The notes beneath the pieces were generated by a model. The model was not told where the DNA came from. It worked only from the letters and a program-made list of their open reading frames with translations, and did no database searches. A program made the translations under genes and the position numbers. A stretch of 64,000 nt of DNA. Source: Mytilus californianus (Eukaryota). The stretch spans positions 47,802,001-47,866,000 of the forward strand of contig NW_026262745.1 of NCBI RefSeq assembly GCF_021869535.1. The letters run 5' to 3'. How positions within the stretch are numbered: the stretch's first letter is position 1; the number at the start of each line of letters is the position of its first letter. Positions 52,847 to 59,600 of this stretch are shown in pieces.

Positions 52847-53550
52847 ATATGTAAAACATTTTTAAATATCATAATCAAAATGTGTGTGATCTGTAAATGT
52901 AAGCATCGTCTTAGTCATACATCCATAATATATATATATTTATAAATAGAAGTCTGAATAGCCTTCGTCAGTATCAATAATTTTAACAATACAGTATTGT
53001 TTAAATTATTTACACTGTCGAAGACTAAAATTGAGAATGGAAATGGGGAATGTGTCAAAGAGACAACAACCCGACCATAGAACAGACAACAGCAGAAGGT
53101 CACCAACAGGTCTTCAATGCAGCGAGAAATTCCCGCACCCGGAGGCGTCCTTCAGCTGGCCCCTAAACAAATATATATACTAGTTCAGTGATAATGAACG
53201 CCATACTAAACTCCAAATTGTACACAAGAAACTAAAATTAAAAATAATACAAGACTAACAAAGGCTAGAGGCTCCTGACTTGGGACAGGCGCAAAAATGC
53301 GGCGGGGTTAAACATGTTTATGAGATCTCAACCCTCCCCCTATACCTCTAGCCGATGTAGAAAAGTAAACGCATTACAATACGCACATTAAAATTCAGTT
53401 CAAGAGAAGTCCGAGTCTGATGTCAGAAGATGTAACCGTAGAAAATAAACAAAATGACAATAATACATAAATAACAACAGACTACTAGCAGTTAACTGAC
53501 ATGCCAGCTCCAGACTTCAATTAAACTGATTGAAAGATTATGTCTTCATC

Positions 53551-53611
53551 ATATGAATATCAGGCACAATCCTTCCCGTTAGGGGTTGAGTATCATACCA
53601 TCATAACATAT
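53551..53611 (-). promoter_or_regulatory. Type II SECIS element (selenocysteine insertion sequence)
   Basis: RNA AUAUG-UU-AUGAU-GGUAUGAUACU-CAA-CCCC-UAAC-GGG-A-AGGAUUGUGCC-UGAU-AUU-CAUAU: helix I, AUGA/GA core, 11-bp helix II with one mismatch, apical AA and mini-stem; about 55 nt after the ORF end. Confidence 0.82.
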
Positions 53612-53665
53612 ATGAGAAGAACATAACCCGTGTCATGCCAACAACTGGTTTTTAAATAAATGTGT

Positions 53666-56638
53666 TTAGTGCCGATGCAAAGACCCGAATCAATATTAAC
53701 GCCAAAATATGCAATCTTTAATGACCTGACAACAGTATCGTAACTATATCCCTTCTTAATAAGTGTATTTAAAGGTTTTGTTAGCTTCAGAGGTGAATAC
53801 TGACATTTTTGTGCTTTATAAAGAATATTTCCATAAAAAATTGGATGTGAAATACCTGAACGTATAAGAAGTCTGCATGTTGAGCTATATTTACGAATGA
53901 TGTCCTTATACCGATGATAAAATTTAGTAAATGTTTTGACTAGTTTGAGATATCGAAAACCCTGGTGTAATAATTTTTCAGTAATACATTGTTACATATA
54001 TGAGCGAATCGTACAAGTTGAGATATATAAACACCGTAAGATGGTGACAAGGGAACGTCACCATCTAAAAATGGATAATTAACGATAGGAAATGAAAAAT
54101 CATCTCTTTTATCATATATTTTAGTATTAAGCTTTCCATTAATGATATAGATATCAAGATCGAGGAAAGGGCAGTGGTCATTGTTAGTATTAGCTTTATT
54201 TAAAGTAAGTTCAACAGGATAAATTTCTTTAGTATACATACTGAAGTCGTCATTATTGGGAGCCAAAATATCATCCAAATATCTAAAAGTATTATTAAAT
54301 TTGTGTATCAGATGTTGTTTCGATGGGTCTTTGCTGATTTTTGTCATAAATTGTTACTCATAGCAAAACAAAAAAAGGTCCGCAATACGTGGTGCACAGT
54401 TAGTCCCCGTTGGAATTCCGATAACCTGACGATATACGGAATCTCCAAAGCGAACAAAAATGTTATCTAGTAAAAATTCAAAGGCATATATAGTATCAAA
54501 GCATGTCCAATTGACATAGTTTTTTTGTTTATTGCTACTAAAAAATGACCTAAAAGAGTTTGAACATATATATTCACATTCTGACTTTTTAAATGCCCAT
54601 TTAATTAGGTGTGTGAATTATTTCTTAATGAGAATGTAAGGCAATGTGGTATATAGGGTAGAAAAATCAAAACTTTGAACAGATTCAAAATCACCAATAT
54701 ATGCATGTAATTTATCAAGTACTTCCAACGAGTACTTGACACTCCAAAAGTAATTAATTCCACTATTTTCGAAGGCCTTATTTGAACAATTTATTATCAG
54801 GTTTTTGATTGTACCAAGTGTACTGGTAAGAAGAATAGACAATTTAGTAGTGGAACAATGGCTTGAAGACGAAATGAATCTATATTTGTAAGGTGTTTTG
54901 TGTAGCTTCGGAAGCCAATACATAGTTGGGACTTTCATTGTATTTGGTTCTGCTTGTAAAGCGGTAGCTAAAAGTTTATGTTTCTAACAGATGTCGTTTT
55001 CTGAAAATGGAGTCAGTTGGAATGTTGGTGAATTGGTGATTTCTTTTTTCAGAACCTCAATGTAAAATTTACGTAAAACAATAATAATATTATTAGCAGC
55101 TTTATCGGCCGGGACAAAAACAAATTCCTTGGCTAGTTCTTTTAGTTTATGTTTGATACGAGAAATAGGTTTATTGTGGTTATTGTTAAGAGTAAAATGT
55201 CCTTTAAAATGTTGAATACGTATCAACTATGTTCATTACTGAATTAAAAAAAGAGTCCAAAGATTTTTTGTCAGCTTTTTCCCGATTTATCCATTTCAAA
55301 CAGTAAGTATGGAGTGATTCGTGGATGATATTACGACACTCATTCCAATTAAAAATTGACGGGGGACGATATTTAGGTCCTTTACTGAGGAATAATTTTA
55401 ACTCTCGGTCTTGAACGATGTTAAGATCTCCTGTTATAACATGGGAAATGGGTCCATAAATGTATTCGGAATTACTGCAATTACATGAAGTAGGTGTATT
55501 TTCACTGATATTAACATCTTTACACAATTGGCTATAATTAAACACAAATTTCCGGGTAGGTTTCTTGTAAATATAACAAATAAGAGGGAGCTCAGTATTA
55601 TCAAAATATCCCGGAATTTGTTCTTTAACAGAATGGTCGTTAAAAATACCGGCAATATTTACAAAATCAAAAACCTTTATTGACATACTTTATTTTAATA
55701 AACTGTTTTTTATGATCTTCAGGGCGATCAATTTTGGGAAACAGTTTAGAATAACAATATGCCATTATAATTTGAACGATTTCATACTTAGGACTGCTAT
55801 ATGAAATTGTGTTGCAATCCTCTAAAATTTTATTTAACTTATTAACCGGTAATGAACAGAGCTTTGTTAACAGATAATGTCTGCCGTTGTTTTTTGAAAT
55901 AGAAATTAGGTCCGAAATATTGGTATTATTGCTCCGAAATTTTCTTTGATTGCGATTTTTTCTACGACCATGAGAACGGTTTTTACGAACAGTTTGAGAA
56001 ACTATATCCAAAATGTTAACAGAATCGGTTCTTGATATATTACCAATTCCCATGATATTATCATTAAGACCGAGAGGGTAGACTGTCTGTAATTTTTTAA
56101 TCCAATTTAATTCAATTATTATCCGTGATCGTACAAACTTTGAATGAGATTCACCAGGCTGCTTATTTACTACTTCTAAAGGTTGAACTGCTAAATATTT
56201 AATAGGATGATTGTGCTTCTTAAGGTGTTGATAAATGATACTTTTGAATTTATTGGGTCTTTTAAAACGATACAGATGTTCTTGAGTGCGTTTAGATAAA
56301 TATCGTCCAGTTTCACCTACGTACTGAATACCGCATCCCGGTTTGTTTCATGTGAGTAAATAAATAATACTGTTTGTTTTTCAAGTTATATCAGTTTCAA
56401 AATTTAAATAAAATGTGCGACCATTAAACGTGGACCTTTCCGTATTGTTGGTGGAAAGACGGGGACATGTAAGTCATTTTTTGGCATGACACTTATCGAT
56501 AGAAGGGTAACCACGATTTTTATTGTTAAAAATGTTAGCGATGGTAGTATTTTTAGATAAGCGATTTTGAAGATTGAGACGTGTAGATACCCTTTGAACG
56601 AGTTTAGTATTTAATATTTTTCCATTTCTAAGCTTCAT
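53666..56638 (-). pseudogene. EN-RT polyprotein ORF of the Naiad element; three probable Sec (UGA) codons plus true lesions
   Basis: Starts at MKLRNGK (56638). In-frame TGA at 56476-74, 56383-81 and 56350-48. Frameshifts near 55670, 55220 and 53985; TAG at 54986-84; TAA near 54620 and 54355. Confidence 0.88.
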
Positions 56639-59600
56639 ATTTGTTTTTTGTTTGTGAATTATATTAGAAAGGAGCAAAGACTGGCGTCCAGAATATGAAC
56701 CAGCATACAATGAATTAAATTATGTAAAACTGATAAATCTGTTAACTATTTGTTAAGCCAATATATTTGTCAACACGATTTTATAACATCATCTTCGTAT
56801 ATAACCATCTTATATTAGTACCGTTGTGCAAATCTTTAGACTTATATATTTATAAATATATATAAATGATGTGTGTATATATCCCATAGTTTGTCAATTT
56901 ATGACAACTGCAACTAAAGTTGTTTAATTTCACATCATTCATATATATTGATGATGTTATGTCACTCAATAACCCACTTTTCAGTGAGTGCTTGCATCTC
57001 ACATATCATATAGAACTTGTAAGACGTTAGTTTTATCAATTGAATTGTTTCACATTCTTCACATGTTTTCATGTCGGGGCCTTTTATAGCCGACTTTACG
57101 GTATGGATTTTTCTCATTATTAAAGGCCGTATGGTTGCCTATAATTGCTTGCATCCACTTCTTTTGAACTTTGGTAGAAAGCTGTCGCATTGTAAATCAT
57201 ACTACATCTCCTTATTTTTATATTGAGATGAGAGATACTATTGACACTAAAAAGTCTGCTTTATCTTAATCTTTTCCTCGAAATTGACACGGAAGGATGA
57301 CTTCAAAATAGAATCTATAACAAACGTGTTGATTTCAATTTTCCATGGTTCATCTTCTAAACTCTCCTCAGTAGCCTACCCATTGCCCCGTAATAGGGCG
57401 TTTACTTATCTCAAGGTGTGCTCCTTATACCCAAAAAACAGATCCAACAGAGTGAGGAGGACGAACGACTGGAACCGACACTAAACAAGATTTACGGTCA
57501 CCATTATTAATTTGTTGATCACTAAGATATGTCTATGTTTCAACTGACTAGAGACATGTTTTTGCAGTATACCAGAATAGTCCTCTGATCAGTTATTTAA
57601 CCGACTGCGTCTTATTACCGATGGTGACTTTTTGACTAATTGTGGATAAGCATGGTGGTTGATATATGTATATCAGGAAGCACTTATCCTGTCGACGCAC
57701 CTGGTCTTGCTCCTGTTGGATACCATGCGATCTCTCAGATTTTATTTGTTACCTTTAGTTGCATTGTCTTGTTTGTGATTGATGAGATTTGAACATTCGT
57801 AAACCAATGTTACCTACATCATTGTACATTAAGTAGTCACGGATTGGATTTTTTCTTGAGTCCCTGTATATTCATTGCATATTGGCTATGTCAGTTTGCA
57901 TCAAGAAGTTTGCGTAACATTGTAAACATCTTTTTGGAGGGGTGCGATTAATTTATTTGTTGCTTTTAGTTATTGCAGATCTGTGTGTAAATCACTGTAT
58001 GATGTCTTACCGTCTTGTTAGACTCGGGCGGATTAAGACCTTATCACATTGTAGAATTCACGTTTACCGATTATAATGTGACCTTTAGATGTGTATTGTT
58101 ATTTGTGTCGTTGGAATGCTCTCTCATCTGACGCTTACCTTGCATCTATTTTGTTCCAACAATTGTCCCCAAACTCGTTTAAATAAGGAAACAGCAACAG
58201 GTACCGCACTCAACTCTTCAGAAGTTGTATGTACGTTGAGGCTATAACCAGATGATAGATAATTTGTGAGAAAGTAGAATTATTGTTGCCACGAAATAAT
58301 TTGTTACTAATGTTTGCATAAAACAAAGCACCAATATGCTTGTCCAAATATACAATAATAACTTAATATGTGGTGCCTACAATAAGTTTTTATCTTTAAA
58401 CAATAAAAAGAAGCAATTAAAAGTATTTTTGAAGACAATAACTATTCCTACATAATTTGCATATATACAAATACTTAAATGTGATTTCTCCGTTACATTT
58501 ATTTCCCTTGGTTTAGACTTCGAATGAAAATACTTCCAGACCTACTGTAAACGCTACGTTGATTTTATCATGTTATATTCATGAACAATATATATGATAG
58601 AAATCCTCGCTTTCCAAGATAATTGGAATTGACAAGAAATAATTCAAATGTTTCTAAAGGTTATTGGTATGAGAACTTGGCTGCCGACTTACAAACCTTA
58701 CACAAAATATTTTCGGACTGGTATTCGGTTTTAGAGTTAATCGGTCAGTATACACATCAATAACCTCTATAAAAATGTGTTCACTCCTTTTATCTTTTTG
58801 TTTCTAAAAAGATGTGCACAGCAGTGGTGCCTCAAATTAACGGAATATATCTAATCAAATGGAAAAAAACGTCAAATATGTTCCATACTGGCAAAACTGA
58901 CATCTCCTCTTATTGATGACTACAGAAAAATAAACGGTTCATTTCAGATGAAATAACAATGCCTGGTCAGGGATGTGTAATACTTTGATGATTGCGGGAT
59001 ATTAACGACTGAAAACCTTTCCAACGGGTAAAGCATTGTTACAATGAATTAACTTTGTAGACATAACATTTCAAGCTTGCAGATATACCGGTCAACTAAT
59101 ATCAAAATAAATGCCCATTTCATAATTTTCACTTCACTTATACTATGATTTTGATGTTCAAGACTCTATATATGTTGACCTCTAGATGTCTTTCTATTTT
59201 TGGGGTTTCTTTTAGTGTTTGTTTGCCAAAATCGTGCGATCATTCCCGATTTCGCCTTTTATTTAGATCATACCGATAGAGATGGCCTTGCAGATGCCTC
59301 AAGTTCAAGTTCCTATCCATGTATTTTTTGTTTCTATTATTAACTGTAAAACTGTCAAGTGAAGGCATTTAAATAATGGGACTTTCCCGATCAAAATGTA
59401 GATATGTTTTCGTTCGAATTAATTCTATTGGTTGTCTTTCATTGTGTCGATTTAATAGTTTCTATTTCAGAAACTAAAATGATTGAAGCATTTCACTTCA
59501 ATTATACATGCTATTATGAATTACGTATTGAATGAGTATGGGCTATTTAAAATATTGAAGTAATCGAAGCCTTACTCTTCAGATTTTACTATGAATTAGG

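What the first reader, a model, noticed from the sequence alone, without database searches (positions are those of the whole stretch)
56348..56638. Retrotransposon endonuclease with three in-frame UGA codons at conserved Cys sites: a selenoprotein-encoding mobile element
Seen: read through from ATG 56638, the minus frame gives KCHAKK*LTCPRL..ETDIT*KTNSIIYLLT*NKPGCGIQYVGETGR..EH..QH. All three stops are TGA (56476-74, 56383-81, 56350-48), and the frame is otherwise open for about 320 codons. The ORF track splits this region and misses most of it. Established: PLE GIY-YIG domains carry Cys at these positions (a C-x-C-xx-C knuckle, a C just before the N-x-IY motif, and the first C of the CCHH motif); Sec-encoding Naiad PLEs were reported in spiders and clams (Craig et al. 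2021). Inference: the UGAs are selenocysteine codons, since the genuine decay stops elsewhere in this copy are TAG/TAA. This would be a Se-ligated Zn-binding nuclease whose retrotransposition could depend on host selenium status. I cannot check whether it has been reported in this lineage.
Basis: partly seen in the sequence, partly recalled or inferred. Interest (0 to 1): 0.93.

Follow-up and report, generated by a model that had tools for sequence, protein, structure and literature searches.

The report
Dead copy of selenocysteine-coding retrotransposon
This is a broken copy of a mussel jumping gene whose many near-identical sister copies keep four UGA 'stop' codons exactly where relatives have cysteine, followed by the RNA hairpin that lets cells read UGA as selenocysteine; the trick was published in 2021 for clams and spiders and is here extended to mussels.

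Summary
On the minus strand from ATG 56638, the only stops in the first 323 codons are TGA at 56476-74, 56383-81 and 56350-48.

They are family features, not decay. The window holds a dead, 5'-truncated copy (56743-53026) of a young 3,964-bp Naiad Penelope-like element.
- All 30 sampled copies carry TGA at the three sites. In genome-wide samples, 90, 98 and 97 of 100 listed hits do.
- In 10 of 12 long copies, a 1,002-codon frame is broken only by these three TGAs plus a fourth at codon 522.
- All four sites align to Cys in homologues: 22 of 22 for the endonuclease sites, 42 of 42 for the fourth.
- Five diverged families from other samples keep TGA at sites 2-4. Two of them also keep it at site 1.
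- A canonical SECIS-like hairpin lies 52 nt after the TAA stop (31.7 bits, just under Rfam's cutoff of 35).
- The host genome has two tRNA-Sec genes.
- Variants shared among copies are 7 synonymous to 1 nonsynonymous.

The phenomenon is published (Craig et al. 2021: two clams, two spiders). What I did not find reported is the mussel host and Sec at the second knuckle Cys in this bivalve-type lineage. The scan has flagged Sec-type Naiads on other DNA of this genome before. Translation to Sec is untested.

The parts
53026..56743 (-). Decayed, 5'-truncated copy of a Sec-type Naiad Penelope-like retrotransposon. It lacks about 208 bp of the 3,964-bp family unit and has no upstream pLTR.
   Evidence: 97.7% identity to the coordinate-reference copy L041:1898-5651; four indels, three nonsense substitutions and 48 mismatches.
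56636..56638 (-). ATG start codon of the single EN-RT ORF
   Evidence: ATG in all 30 short and all 12 long sampled copies; an upstream in-frame stop precedes it.
56474..56476 (-). TGA site 1 (codon 55), at the second Cys of the CX2-5CxxC knuckle (C-HAKK-U-LT-C)
   Evidence: Of 100 listed genome hits: 90 TGA, 7 TTA, 2 TAA, 1 TGC. Cys in 22 of 22 homologues.
56381..56383 (-). TGA site 2 (codon 86), at the Cys just before the GIY motif (U-KTNS-IIY)
   Evidence: 98 of 100 TGA. Cys in 22 of 22 homologues.
56348..56350 (-). TGA site 3 (codon 97), at the first Cys of the CCHH motif inside the GIY-YIG core (U-NKPG-C...H...H)
   Evidence: 97 of 100 TGA, 3 TAA. Cys in 22 of 22 homologues.
56057..56491 (-). 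GIY-YIG endonuclease domain: knuckle 56491-56465, IIYLLT 56368-56351, YVGETG 56323-56306, LGLNDN 56074-56057
   Evidence: for motif coordinates; the homologue's EN region folds with pLDDT 92, and its best PDB matches are GIY-YIG nucleases (I-TevI 1ln0, probability 1.00, TM 0.74 by target; then UvrC, T4 EndoII, Hpy188I).
55934..55987 (-). KR-rich linker block (RKNRSHGRRKNRNQRKFR)
   Evidence: Listed as a Naiad diagnostic in PMC8557442.
55369..55488 (-). CxC motif (SCNCS, 55488-55474) and GxKF/Y motif (GPKY, 55380-55369), read in the frame reached after the +1 shift near 55673
55074..55112 (-). PADKA motif (55112-55098) and the family's fourth Sec codon at DKA+8 (codon 522). In this copy it has mutated to TTA (55076-55074).
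   Evidence: TGA in the reference copy, TTA in the window; 1,422 genome hits, first 100 all TGA. Cys in 42 of 42 homologues.
54264..54281 (-). Reverse-transcriptase catalytic motif YLDDIL
53666..53668 (-). TAA that ends the 1,002-codon family ORF
53550..53614 (-). SECIS-like hairpin in the 3' UTR, 52 nt after the TAA. It has the AUGA / apical A-rich loop / UGAU core. In this copy the apical AAA reads CAA.
   Evidence: SECIS_1 27.8 bits, E 0.0047; 31.7 bits, E 0.0034 in the reference copy; folding z-score -3.8; exact in 11 of 12 long copies.
53026..53549 (-). 3' tail of the element, including a twister-like core string at 53290-53274
   Evidence: The string match is the only evidence; no Rfam twister match at E<=1 in this stretch.

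Best explanation
The window holds a dead copy of a recently active Naiad-type Penelope-like retrotransposon of a mussel. The family's single ORF (N-terminal GIY-YIG endonuclease, KR-rich/CxC linker, reverse transcriptase; 1,002 codons) contains four UGA codons. They replace conserved cysteines: the second Cys of the CX2-5CxxC knuckle, the Cys before GIY, the first Cys of CCHH, and the Cys eight residues after DKA in the RT. The most likely mechanism is that a SECIS hairpin 52 nt after the TAA stop recruits the host selenocysteine machinery, so that all four UGAs are read as Sec. That would give a multi-Sec EN-RT protein. Shown here: the codons, their near-fixation across copies, their Cys alignment, their conservation in diverged families, the SECIS-like hairpin, host tRNA-Sec genes, and purifying selection downstream of the UGAs. 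Inferred: actual Sec insertion, metal ligation by Sec, and any dependence on selenium supply. In the window copy the three endonuclease TGAs are inherited relics. That copy is 5'-truncated and has four frame-breaking indels and three nonsense substitutions. Its fourth Sec codon has mutated to TTA, and its SECIS loop carries one change. It encodes nothing.
For: Copies in this genome:
- TGA at codons 55, 86 and 97 in 30 of 30 copies.
- 10 of 12 long copies have a 1,002-codon frame interrupted only by TGA at 55, 86, 97 and 522, ending in TAA.
- Genome-wide pattern counts give 90, 98, 97 and 100 TGA among the first 100 listed hits for sites 1-4.
- Long copies are 99.3-99.98% identical, and 7 of 12 have an upstream partial tandem (pLTR).

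Homologues and related families:
- Cys stands at sites 1-3 in 22 of 22 homologues and at site 4 in 42 of 42.
- Five other families from independent samples (about 38-58% aa identity) keep TGA at sites 2-4 where their contigs cover them. L048 and L050 also keep it at site 1; L043, L045 and L049 have Cys there.
- The five Sec-type families that could be placed form one group with 100% SH-aLRT support, and mussel plus L048 form a subgroup with 99%.

Sec decoding signals:
- SECIS_1 hit of 31.7 bits, E 0.0034, 52 nt after the stop, with the AUGA/AAA/UGAU core and folding z-score -3.8.
- SECIS-like hairpins with different helix sequences but the same core follow the ORF in L043/L044 and L050.
- Two tRNA-SeC(TCA) genes in the host.

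Selection and fold:
- Variants shared by at least 3 of 30 copies are 7 synonymous to 1 nonsynonymous, against 53 to 112 for rare variants (Fisher p=0.0027). All lie downstream of UGA sites 1 and 2; six follow site 3 as well, and two follow site 4.
- The EN of a homologue has a GIY-YIG fold.

The pattern matches the published clam-type Sec Naiads (PMC8557442).
Against: - There is no protein-level or ribosome-level evidence.
- The SECIS scores are below Rfam's gathering cutoff (31.7, 28.4, 27.8 and 26.5 against 35 bits).
- No SECIS was detected at E<=1 in the relatives L048 and L049; a laxer scan (E<=10) of L048's 3' part also found none.
- The RNA-seq reads cover the family on both strands, pile up at the 3' end, and mostly run on into unrelated flanks. 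They show presence in RNA libraries but not a dedicated sense transcript.
- About 7% of copies carry TTA at site 1. That is too many for independent hits, so a lineage with Leu there was still copied.
- Decoding four UGAs with a single SECIS up to 2.9 kb away could be inefficient.
Confidence: 0.8

Rival explanations
1. The UGAs are recoded but not as selenocysteine. For example, near-cognate readthrough could insert Trp, Cys or Arg, or the Sec machinery could insert Cys. The element would then encode an ordinary or mixed protein.
For: Nothing here identifies the inserted residue. The SECIS hits are sub-threshold and absent in two relatives.
Against: A hairpin with the full AUGA/AAA/UGAU SECIS core sits right after the ORF in three diverged families, with different helix sequences. 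All four UGAs fall on Cys columns, which is the classic Cys/Sec exchange. The host has tRNA-Sec.
Confidence: 0.08
2. The TGAs are true stops. The family would be a non-autonomous or dead lineage that encodes only a 54-residue peptide and is copied in trans by other Naiads in the genome.
For: A TTA variant at site 1 reached about 7% of copies, which hints at some trans-mobilisation. The RNA evidence is ambiguous.
Against: A dead ORF would not stay open for 1,002 codons apart from four Cys-aligned TGAs in 10 of 12 copies. It would not show a 7:1 synonymous excess in shared variants downstream of the TGAs. It would not keep the same TGA positions in families only 38-58% identical in protein.
Confidence: 0.07
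3. The three TGAs are chance decay mutations, or assembly errors, private to this copy.
For: The copy is clearly decayed, and Cys codons are one step from TGA.
Against: The same codons occur in hundreds of copies on many contigs. The element is held by sequencing runs from at least five organism labels and 12 studies.
Confidence: 0.01

Closest known systems
Naiad_Mmer and Naiad_Scon, selenoprotein-encoding Naiad PLEs of the clams Mercenaria mercenaria and Sinonovacula constricta (Craig et al. 2021, PMC8557442)
   Same: Single ORF with an N-terminal GIY-YIG EN followed by RT. UGA at the Cys before GIY-YIG, at the first Cys of CCHH, and at the Cys 8 aa after DKA. SECIS shortly after a UAA/UAG stop. 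Bivalve host. High copy number and 5' truncation.
   Different: The host is a mussel, which is not among the four reported Sec families. There is an extra UGA at the second Cys of the CX2-5CxxC knuckle. The fourth UGA of Naiad_Scon lies instead at a weakly constrained RT6(D) residue. The SECIS here matches the Rfam model with an apical mini-stem, whereas the paper calls its elements type I. I could not align to the published sequences, because the paper's supplements are not held.
Naiad_Sdum and Naiad_Smim, Sec-type Naiads of Stegodyphus spiders (same paper)
   Same: UGA in the CX2-5CxxC knuckle (Sdum: first and second Cys), before GIY, and at DKA+8. SECIS after the stop.
   Different: In spiders the first knuckle Cys is Sec and the first CCHH Cys stays Cys. 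Here the first knuckle Cys stays Cys and the first CCHH Cys is Sec. The paper infers independent origins for the spider and clam types. This family groups with the clam-type pattern.
Cys-type Naiads, including those reported for Mytilus galloprovincialis (same paper)
   Same: Architecture, diagnostic motifs (KR-rich block, CxC, GxKF/Y, DKA), pLTR tandems, no Rfam ribozyme match (hammerhead included) at E<=1, TA-rich targets.
   Different: They have Cys at all four sites. The paper notes a 5-aa insert in the knuckle of mussel Naiads. This family has a short C-x4-U-xx-C knuckle, so it appears to be a different mussel family.
Selenoprotein P (a multi-Sec host protein; up to 132 UGAs in molluscs according to the title of Baclaocos et al. 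2019, cited in PMC8557442)
   Same: Several UGAs in one ORF are decoded processively with 3' UTR SECIS help. Bivalves are rich in such decoding.
   Different: It is a host gene, not a mobile element, and its Sec residues are not in nuclease or RT metal-binding motifs. By general knowledge, not checked here, SelenoP mRNAs typically carry two SECIS elements; this element has one.

Membership tests
Naiad clade of Penelope-like elements (N-terminal EN+) | Single ORF with the GIY-YIG endonuclease N-terminal to the reverse transcriptase | tested here: met
   the GIY...YVGETG motifs lie upstream of DKA and YLDDIL in one 1,002-codon frame; the homologue's EN model matches I-TevI, UvrC and EndoII GIY-YIG domains.
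Naiad clade of Penelope-like elements (N-terminal EN+) | CX2-5CxxC knuckle upstream of GIY, and a CCHH motif inside the GIY-YIG core | tested here: met
   alignment: C-x4-U-xx-C and U-x4-C...H...H, with U (TGA) standing in conserved Cys columns.
Naiad clade of Penelope-like elements (N-terminal EN+) | KR-rich block, CxC motif and GxKF/Y motif between EN and RT; DKA instead of DKG | tested here: met
   (55987-55934, SCNCS 55488-55474, GPKY 55380-55369, PADKA 55112-55098). Criteria taken from the paper.
Naiad clade of Penelope-like elements (N-terminal EN+) | IFD-like insertion of about 20 aa between RT3(A) and RT4(B) | not tested
   No alignment to canonical PLE RTs was made.
Naiad clade of Penelope-like elements (N-terminal EN+) | Partial tandem (pLTR) organisation, strong 5' truncation, unit of 3.4-4.4 kb | tested here: met
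   3,964-bp unit, with an upstream 5'-truncated tandem copy in 7 of 12 long loci. Hit counts rise 5' to 3': about 450 (EN sites), 1,422 (site 4), 6,012 (SECIS). The window copy itself has no pLTR.
Naiad clade of Penelope-like elements (N-terminal EN+) | No canonical hammerhead ribozyme | tested here: met
   the Rfam scan of the whole reference locus at E<=1 returned only SECIS_1 and one spurious sRNA hit.
Eukaryotic selenoprotein gene | In-frame UGA at positions where homologues have Cys, conserved across diverged relatives | tested here: met
   (Cys in 22/22 and 42/42). (TGA kept in five other families). (Sec-type families form one group).
Eukaryotic selenoprotein gene | SECIS element in the 3' UTR | tested here: inconclusive
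   The canonical AUGA/AAA/UGAU hairpin lies 52 nt after the stop, at 31.7 bits (E 0.0034) against a cutoff of 35, and is stable. Analogous hairpins occur in L043/44 and L050, but none was found in L048/L049. SECISearch3 was not available.
Eukaryotic selenoprotein gene | Host has the Sec decoding machinery | tested here: met
   Two tRNA-SeC(TCA) genes at 79.6 and 77 bits (cutoff 47), confirmed by ARAGORN. SBP2, eEFSec and the other protein factors were not searched.
Eukaryotic selenoprotein gene | Sec demonstrably incorporated into the protein | not testable with these tools
   Needs 75Se labelling, mass spectrometry or ribosome profiling.

The most novel reading that the evidence does not exclude
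Sec-type Naiads may form one clade that spread across bivalve hosts, rather than arising host by host. Within it, Cys-to-Sec replacement would have proceeded stepwise through putative metal-ligand positions: three sites first, then the second knuckle Cys in the sublineage that includes this mussel family. The family appears to be currently active and has scattered about 6,000 SECIS-bearing 3' tails through the genome. That would be a ready source of SECIS elements for host 3' UTRs, and a natural system in which transposition rate could track selenium supply.
Probability: 0.3. Interest if true: 0.7.

Novelty: new member of a known kind. Interest (0 to 1): 0.45.

Why it matters
Selenoprotein-encoding transposons are known from only four families (two clams, two spiders). 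This adds a mussel family that looks very recently active: long copies 99.3-99.98% identical, several hundred copies that still contain the endonuclease, and many uninterrupted frames. It shows the same UGA positions conserved across at least six diverged families, which is stronger evolutionary evidence for recoding than any single consensus sequence. It also shows a nested pattern of three and then four Sec sites. Practically, genome annotators will keep splitting or discarding such ORFs, and the thousands of dispersed SECIS-bearing tails could confound selenoprotein prediction or seed new selenoproteins. It does not open a new category: Craig et al. predicted that further bivalve cases would be found.

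Tried and rejected
- **Pfam:** scans of the window pieces and of uninterrupted pieces from a sister copy gave no GIY-YIG or RVT hit. I relied on motifs, homologue alignment and a fold search instead.
- **Rfam at gathering threshold:** nothing found on the window. The SECIS only appears with E-value reporting.
- **Paper supplements:** those with the published Naiad sequences are not held, so no direct alignment to Naiad_Mmer, Scon, Sdum or Smim was possible.
- **Second batch of copies:** The subfamily analysis therefore rests on 30 short and 12 long loci.
- **Cluster look-up:** it gave no names or organisms for the related proteins. The accession GCA_014845165 was not found in the paper library, so the hosts of the related Sec-type families remain unknown.
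- **My regex SECIS scan:** it found nothing in L048/L049.
- **RNA reads:** they cannot show a dedicated transcript, strand or translation. No variant at the four TGA positions was among the 40 best-supported differences listed, but 256 further differences were not shown, so this is weak evidence.
- **Foldseek:** E-values were only about 1e-3. The call rests on probability 1.00, TM 0.74 by target, and the run of GIY-YIG nucleases at the top of the list.
- **Model coordinates:** they are not exposed, so I could not measure whether the Cys/Sec positions cluster into metal sites.
- **Chance decay or an assembly artefact:** considered and rejected on the copy census.
Full report
**1. The observation**

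Reading the minus strand from ATG 56638 gives 323 codons. The mechanical ORF list splits the region.

**2. What the locus is**

The window is G000:C165:47802001-47866000 of a 1.65-Gb genome. Earlier notes of this scan call it a mussel. I did not verify the species myself. RNA runs labelled 'mollusc metagenome' do hold the element.

A 441-bp query from the site found 864 first-look candidates, and all 40 that were scored were at least 99% identical.

Twelve 8.4-kb loci define a 3,964-bp unit. I use L041:1690-5653 as a coordinate reference only.
- The copies are 99.3-99.98% identical to that reference.
- In 7 of 12, the unit is preceded by a 5'-truncated tandem copy that ends at the same 3' boundary. 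This is the pseudo-LTR arrangement of Penelope-like elements.

The window copy spans 56743-53026 on the minus strand and is 97.7% identical to the reference. It lacks about 208 bp at the 5' end and has no pLTR. It is broken in these ways:
- +1 bp near 55673
- -2 bp near 55224
- -28 bp near 53990
- -7 bp near 53687
- nonsense substitutions TAG 54986-84, TAA 54620-18 and TAA 54356-54

The Naiad diagnostics listed by Craig et al. are present:
- CX2-5CxxC knuckle
- GIY...YVGETG core with CCHH
- KR-rich block
- CxC motif
- GPKY motif
- PADKA motif
- YLDDIL motif

Pfam recognises none of these. A high-confidence model (pLDDT 92) of the EN region of a Cys-type homologue has GIY-YIG nucleases as its best PDB matches: I-TevI, then UvrC, T4 EndoII and Hpy188I.

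**3. The TGAs belong to the family**

- All 30 sampled copies have TGA at codons 55, 86 and 97.
- In 10 of 12 long copies the frame is open for 1,002 codons, apart from those three TGAs plus a fourth at codon 522. It ends in TAA.

Genome-wide pattern searches left the codon free and allowed up to 2 flank mismatches. The reversed-pattern control gave no hits.

| Site | Total hits | Codon in the first 100 listed |
|---|---|---|
| 1 | 451 | 90 TGA, 7 TTA, 2 TAA, 1 TGC |
| 2 | 407 | 98 TGA, 1 AGA, 1 GGA |
| 3 | 502 | 97 TGA, 3 TAA |
| 4 | 1,422 | 100 TGA |

The site-2 pattern contained a synonymous variant (ATT at codon 91) that marks the window's own subfamily. The TGAs therefore hold in at least two subfamilies.

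**4. The TGAs sit on conserved cysteines**

A full HMMER search used the piece between sites 3 and 4 and found 2,757 relatives.
- In 22 of 22 full-length homologues, all three EN sites align to Cys. The sites are the second knuckle Cys, the Cys before GIY, and the first Cys of CCHH.
- In 42 of 42 homologues with a recognisable DKA motif, the residue at DKA+8 is Cys.

**5. Conservation in diverged families**

The closest database relatives are protein fragments that start just after site 3 or end exactly at site 4. Their contigs explain why.

| Locus | Source | TGA at sites | Site 1 |
|---|---|---|---|
| L043/L044 | JGI 3300060447; SRR28362935 | 2, 3, 4 | Cys |
| L045 | ENA ERZ27290654 | 2, 3, 4 | Cys |
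| L049 | ENA ERZ925368 | 2, 3, 4 | Cys |
| L048 | ENA ERZ27264957; 54% aa identity | 1, 2, 3, 4 | TGA |
| L050 | GCA_014845165.1; 58% aa identity | 1, 2, 3, 4 | TGA |

On a quick maximum-likelihood tree of the region between sites 3 and 4, with 37 rows, the five Sec-type families that could be placed form one group (SH-aLRT 100). Mussel plus L048 form a subgroup (99).

This nested pattern cannot be produced by decay: three sites are shared by all families, and the fourth only by the subgroup. It is also the three-site pattern published for clams.

Two caveats apply. The hosts of these contigs are unknown. The 'Cys' label of the other rows was checked directly for 22 and 42 of them only.

**6. 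The decoding signal**

Rfam's SECIS_1 model matches L041:5063-5127 at 31.7 bits (E 0.0034; cutoff 35).
- The match starts 52 nt after the TAA.
- It has a 5-bp lower helix, an AUGA/UGAU core, a 10-position upper helix and an apical AAA followed by a mini-stem.
- It folds better than all 200 shuffles (z = -3.8).
- It is letter-perfect in 11 of 12 long copies.

The window copy has it at 53614-53550 (27.8 bits), with the apical AAA reading CAA.

L043/L044 and L050 have SECIS-like hairpins with the same core but different helices at the end of their ORFs (26.5 and 28.4 bits). None was found in L048 or L049.

The host genome has two tRNA-SeC(TCA) genes.

**7. Selection**

| Variant class (30 copies) | Synonymous | Nonsynonymous |
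|---|---|---|
| Shared by 3 or more copies (inherited from replicating masters) | 7 | 1 |
| Rare (post-insertion) | 53 | 112 |

Fisher's exact test gives p = 0.0027. All eight shared variants lie after UGA sites 1 and 2. Seven of the eight, including six of the seven synonymous ones, also follow site 3, and two follow site 4. The 13-copy full-length set gives 7:5 against 20:51 (p = 0.05), and four of its five shared nonsynonymous changes (codons 893, 991, 997, 1001) lie in the last 110 codons. The frame beyond the UGAs has therefore mattered to the replicating lineage.

**8. RNA**

The element is held by runs from five organism labels and 12 studies. Raw RNA-seq reads from two of these organisms cover the whole unit. 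Coverage is on both strands and rises steeply toward the 3' end. Between 52% and 76% of laid reads run on into unrelated sequence. That fits thousands of truncated copies embedded in other transcripts. It shows presence in RNA libraries, not a dedicated mRNA, and says nothing about translation.

**9. Comparison with what is known**

Craig et al. 2021 (PMC8557442) described exactly this kind of element: Naiads with three or four UGAs at conserved Cys plus a SECIS. They found it in two clams and two spiders and predicted more in bivalves. They curated Mytilus galloprovincialis Naiads but reported no Sec family there. They noted a 5-aa knuckle insert in mussel Naiads, which this family lacks.

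Three full-text searches found no later report.

This scan has already flagged Sec-type Naiads on other DNA of the same genome. One follow-up on a different, divergent family reached the same conclusion.

**10. Verdict**

The window copy is a fossil. The element is a new member of a published kind. The mussel host, and Sec at the second knuckle Cys within the bivalve-type lineage, are the parts I did not find reported. Sec insertion itself, metal ligation by Sec, and selenium-dependent transposition remain hypotheses.

Noticed in passing
window 53274-53290 (minus); L041:5386-5410; L048:4054-4087: The element's 3' tail contains a twister-ribozyme-like core string (GCCTGTCCCAAGTCAGG). The related family L048 gives a weak partial twister-P1 match (15.8 bits, E 5.2). 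Earlier notes of this scan describe twister motifs in Naiad tails. No Rfam twister hit at E<=1 was found in this window stretch.
   Followed up: partly
window 52959-53027: A near-perfect hairpin of about 69 nt (weak miRNA-precursor-like Rfam hits, all far below their cutoffs) starts at the element's 3' boundary. It is absent from the flanks of other copies.
   Followed up: no
window 52917-52948 and 56847-56878: TA-rich microsatellite-like stretches lie about 80-100 bp outside both ends of the copy and form an 88% complementary inverted pair. This is compatible with the reported (TA)n target preference of Naiads. The 80-100 bp between each stretch and the aligned element is unexplained.
   Followed up: no
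G000:C154:27755505-27807263: A tandem array of at least 50 tRNA-like units, each 81 nt and spaced 728 bp apart. Each scores 42.8 bits against the tRNA-Sec model, below the cutoff of 47. It is probably an ordinary long-arm tRNA gene array.
   Followed up: no
genome-wide (one search list; e.g. contigs C2, C24, C57, C79, C86): 7 of 100 listed copies have TTA (Leu) instead of TGA at site 1, on different contigs. That is too frequent for independent hits, so a sublineage with Leu in the knuckle was still amplified. The window copy has the same TGA-to-TTA change at site 4.
   Followed up: no
genome-wide: Hit counts rise from about 450 (EN) to 1,422 (RT site 4) to 6,012 (SECIS core). So about 6,000 SECIS-bearing tails of this one family are dispersed in the genome.
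   Followed up: partly
L043:6231-6298; L044:3235-3302: In this related Sec-type family the last in-frame TGA of the ORF (L043:6240) is itself the UGA of the SECIS AUGA core, and a TAA follows 9 codons later. This recalls the Naiad_Mmer arrangement described in the paper.
   Followed up: no
L041:2275 (codon 91, third base); window 56366: The synonymous ATA/ATT variant marks subfamilies. It is T in 9 of 30 sampled copies. All reads of one organism's RNA run, and the contigs of two mollusc RNA runs, carry the window-type T.
   Followed up: partly
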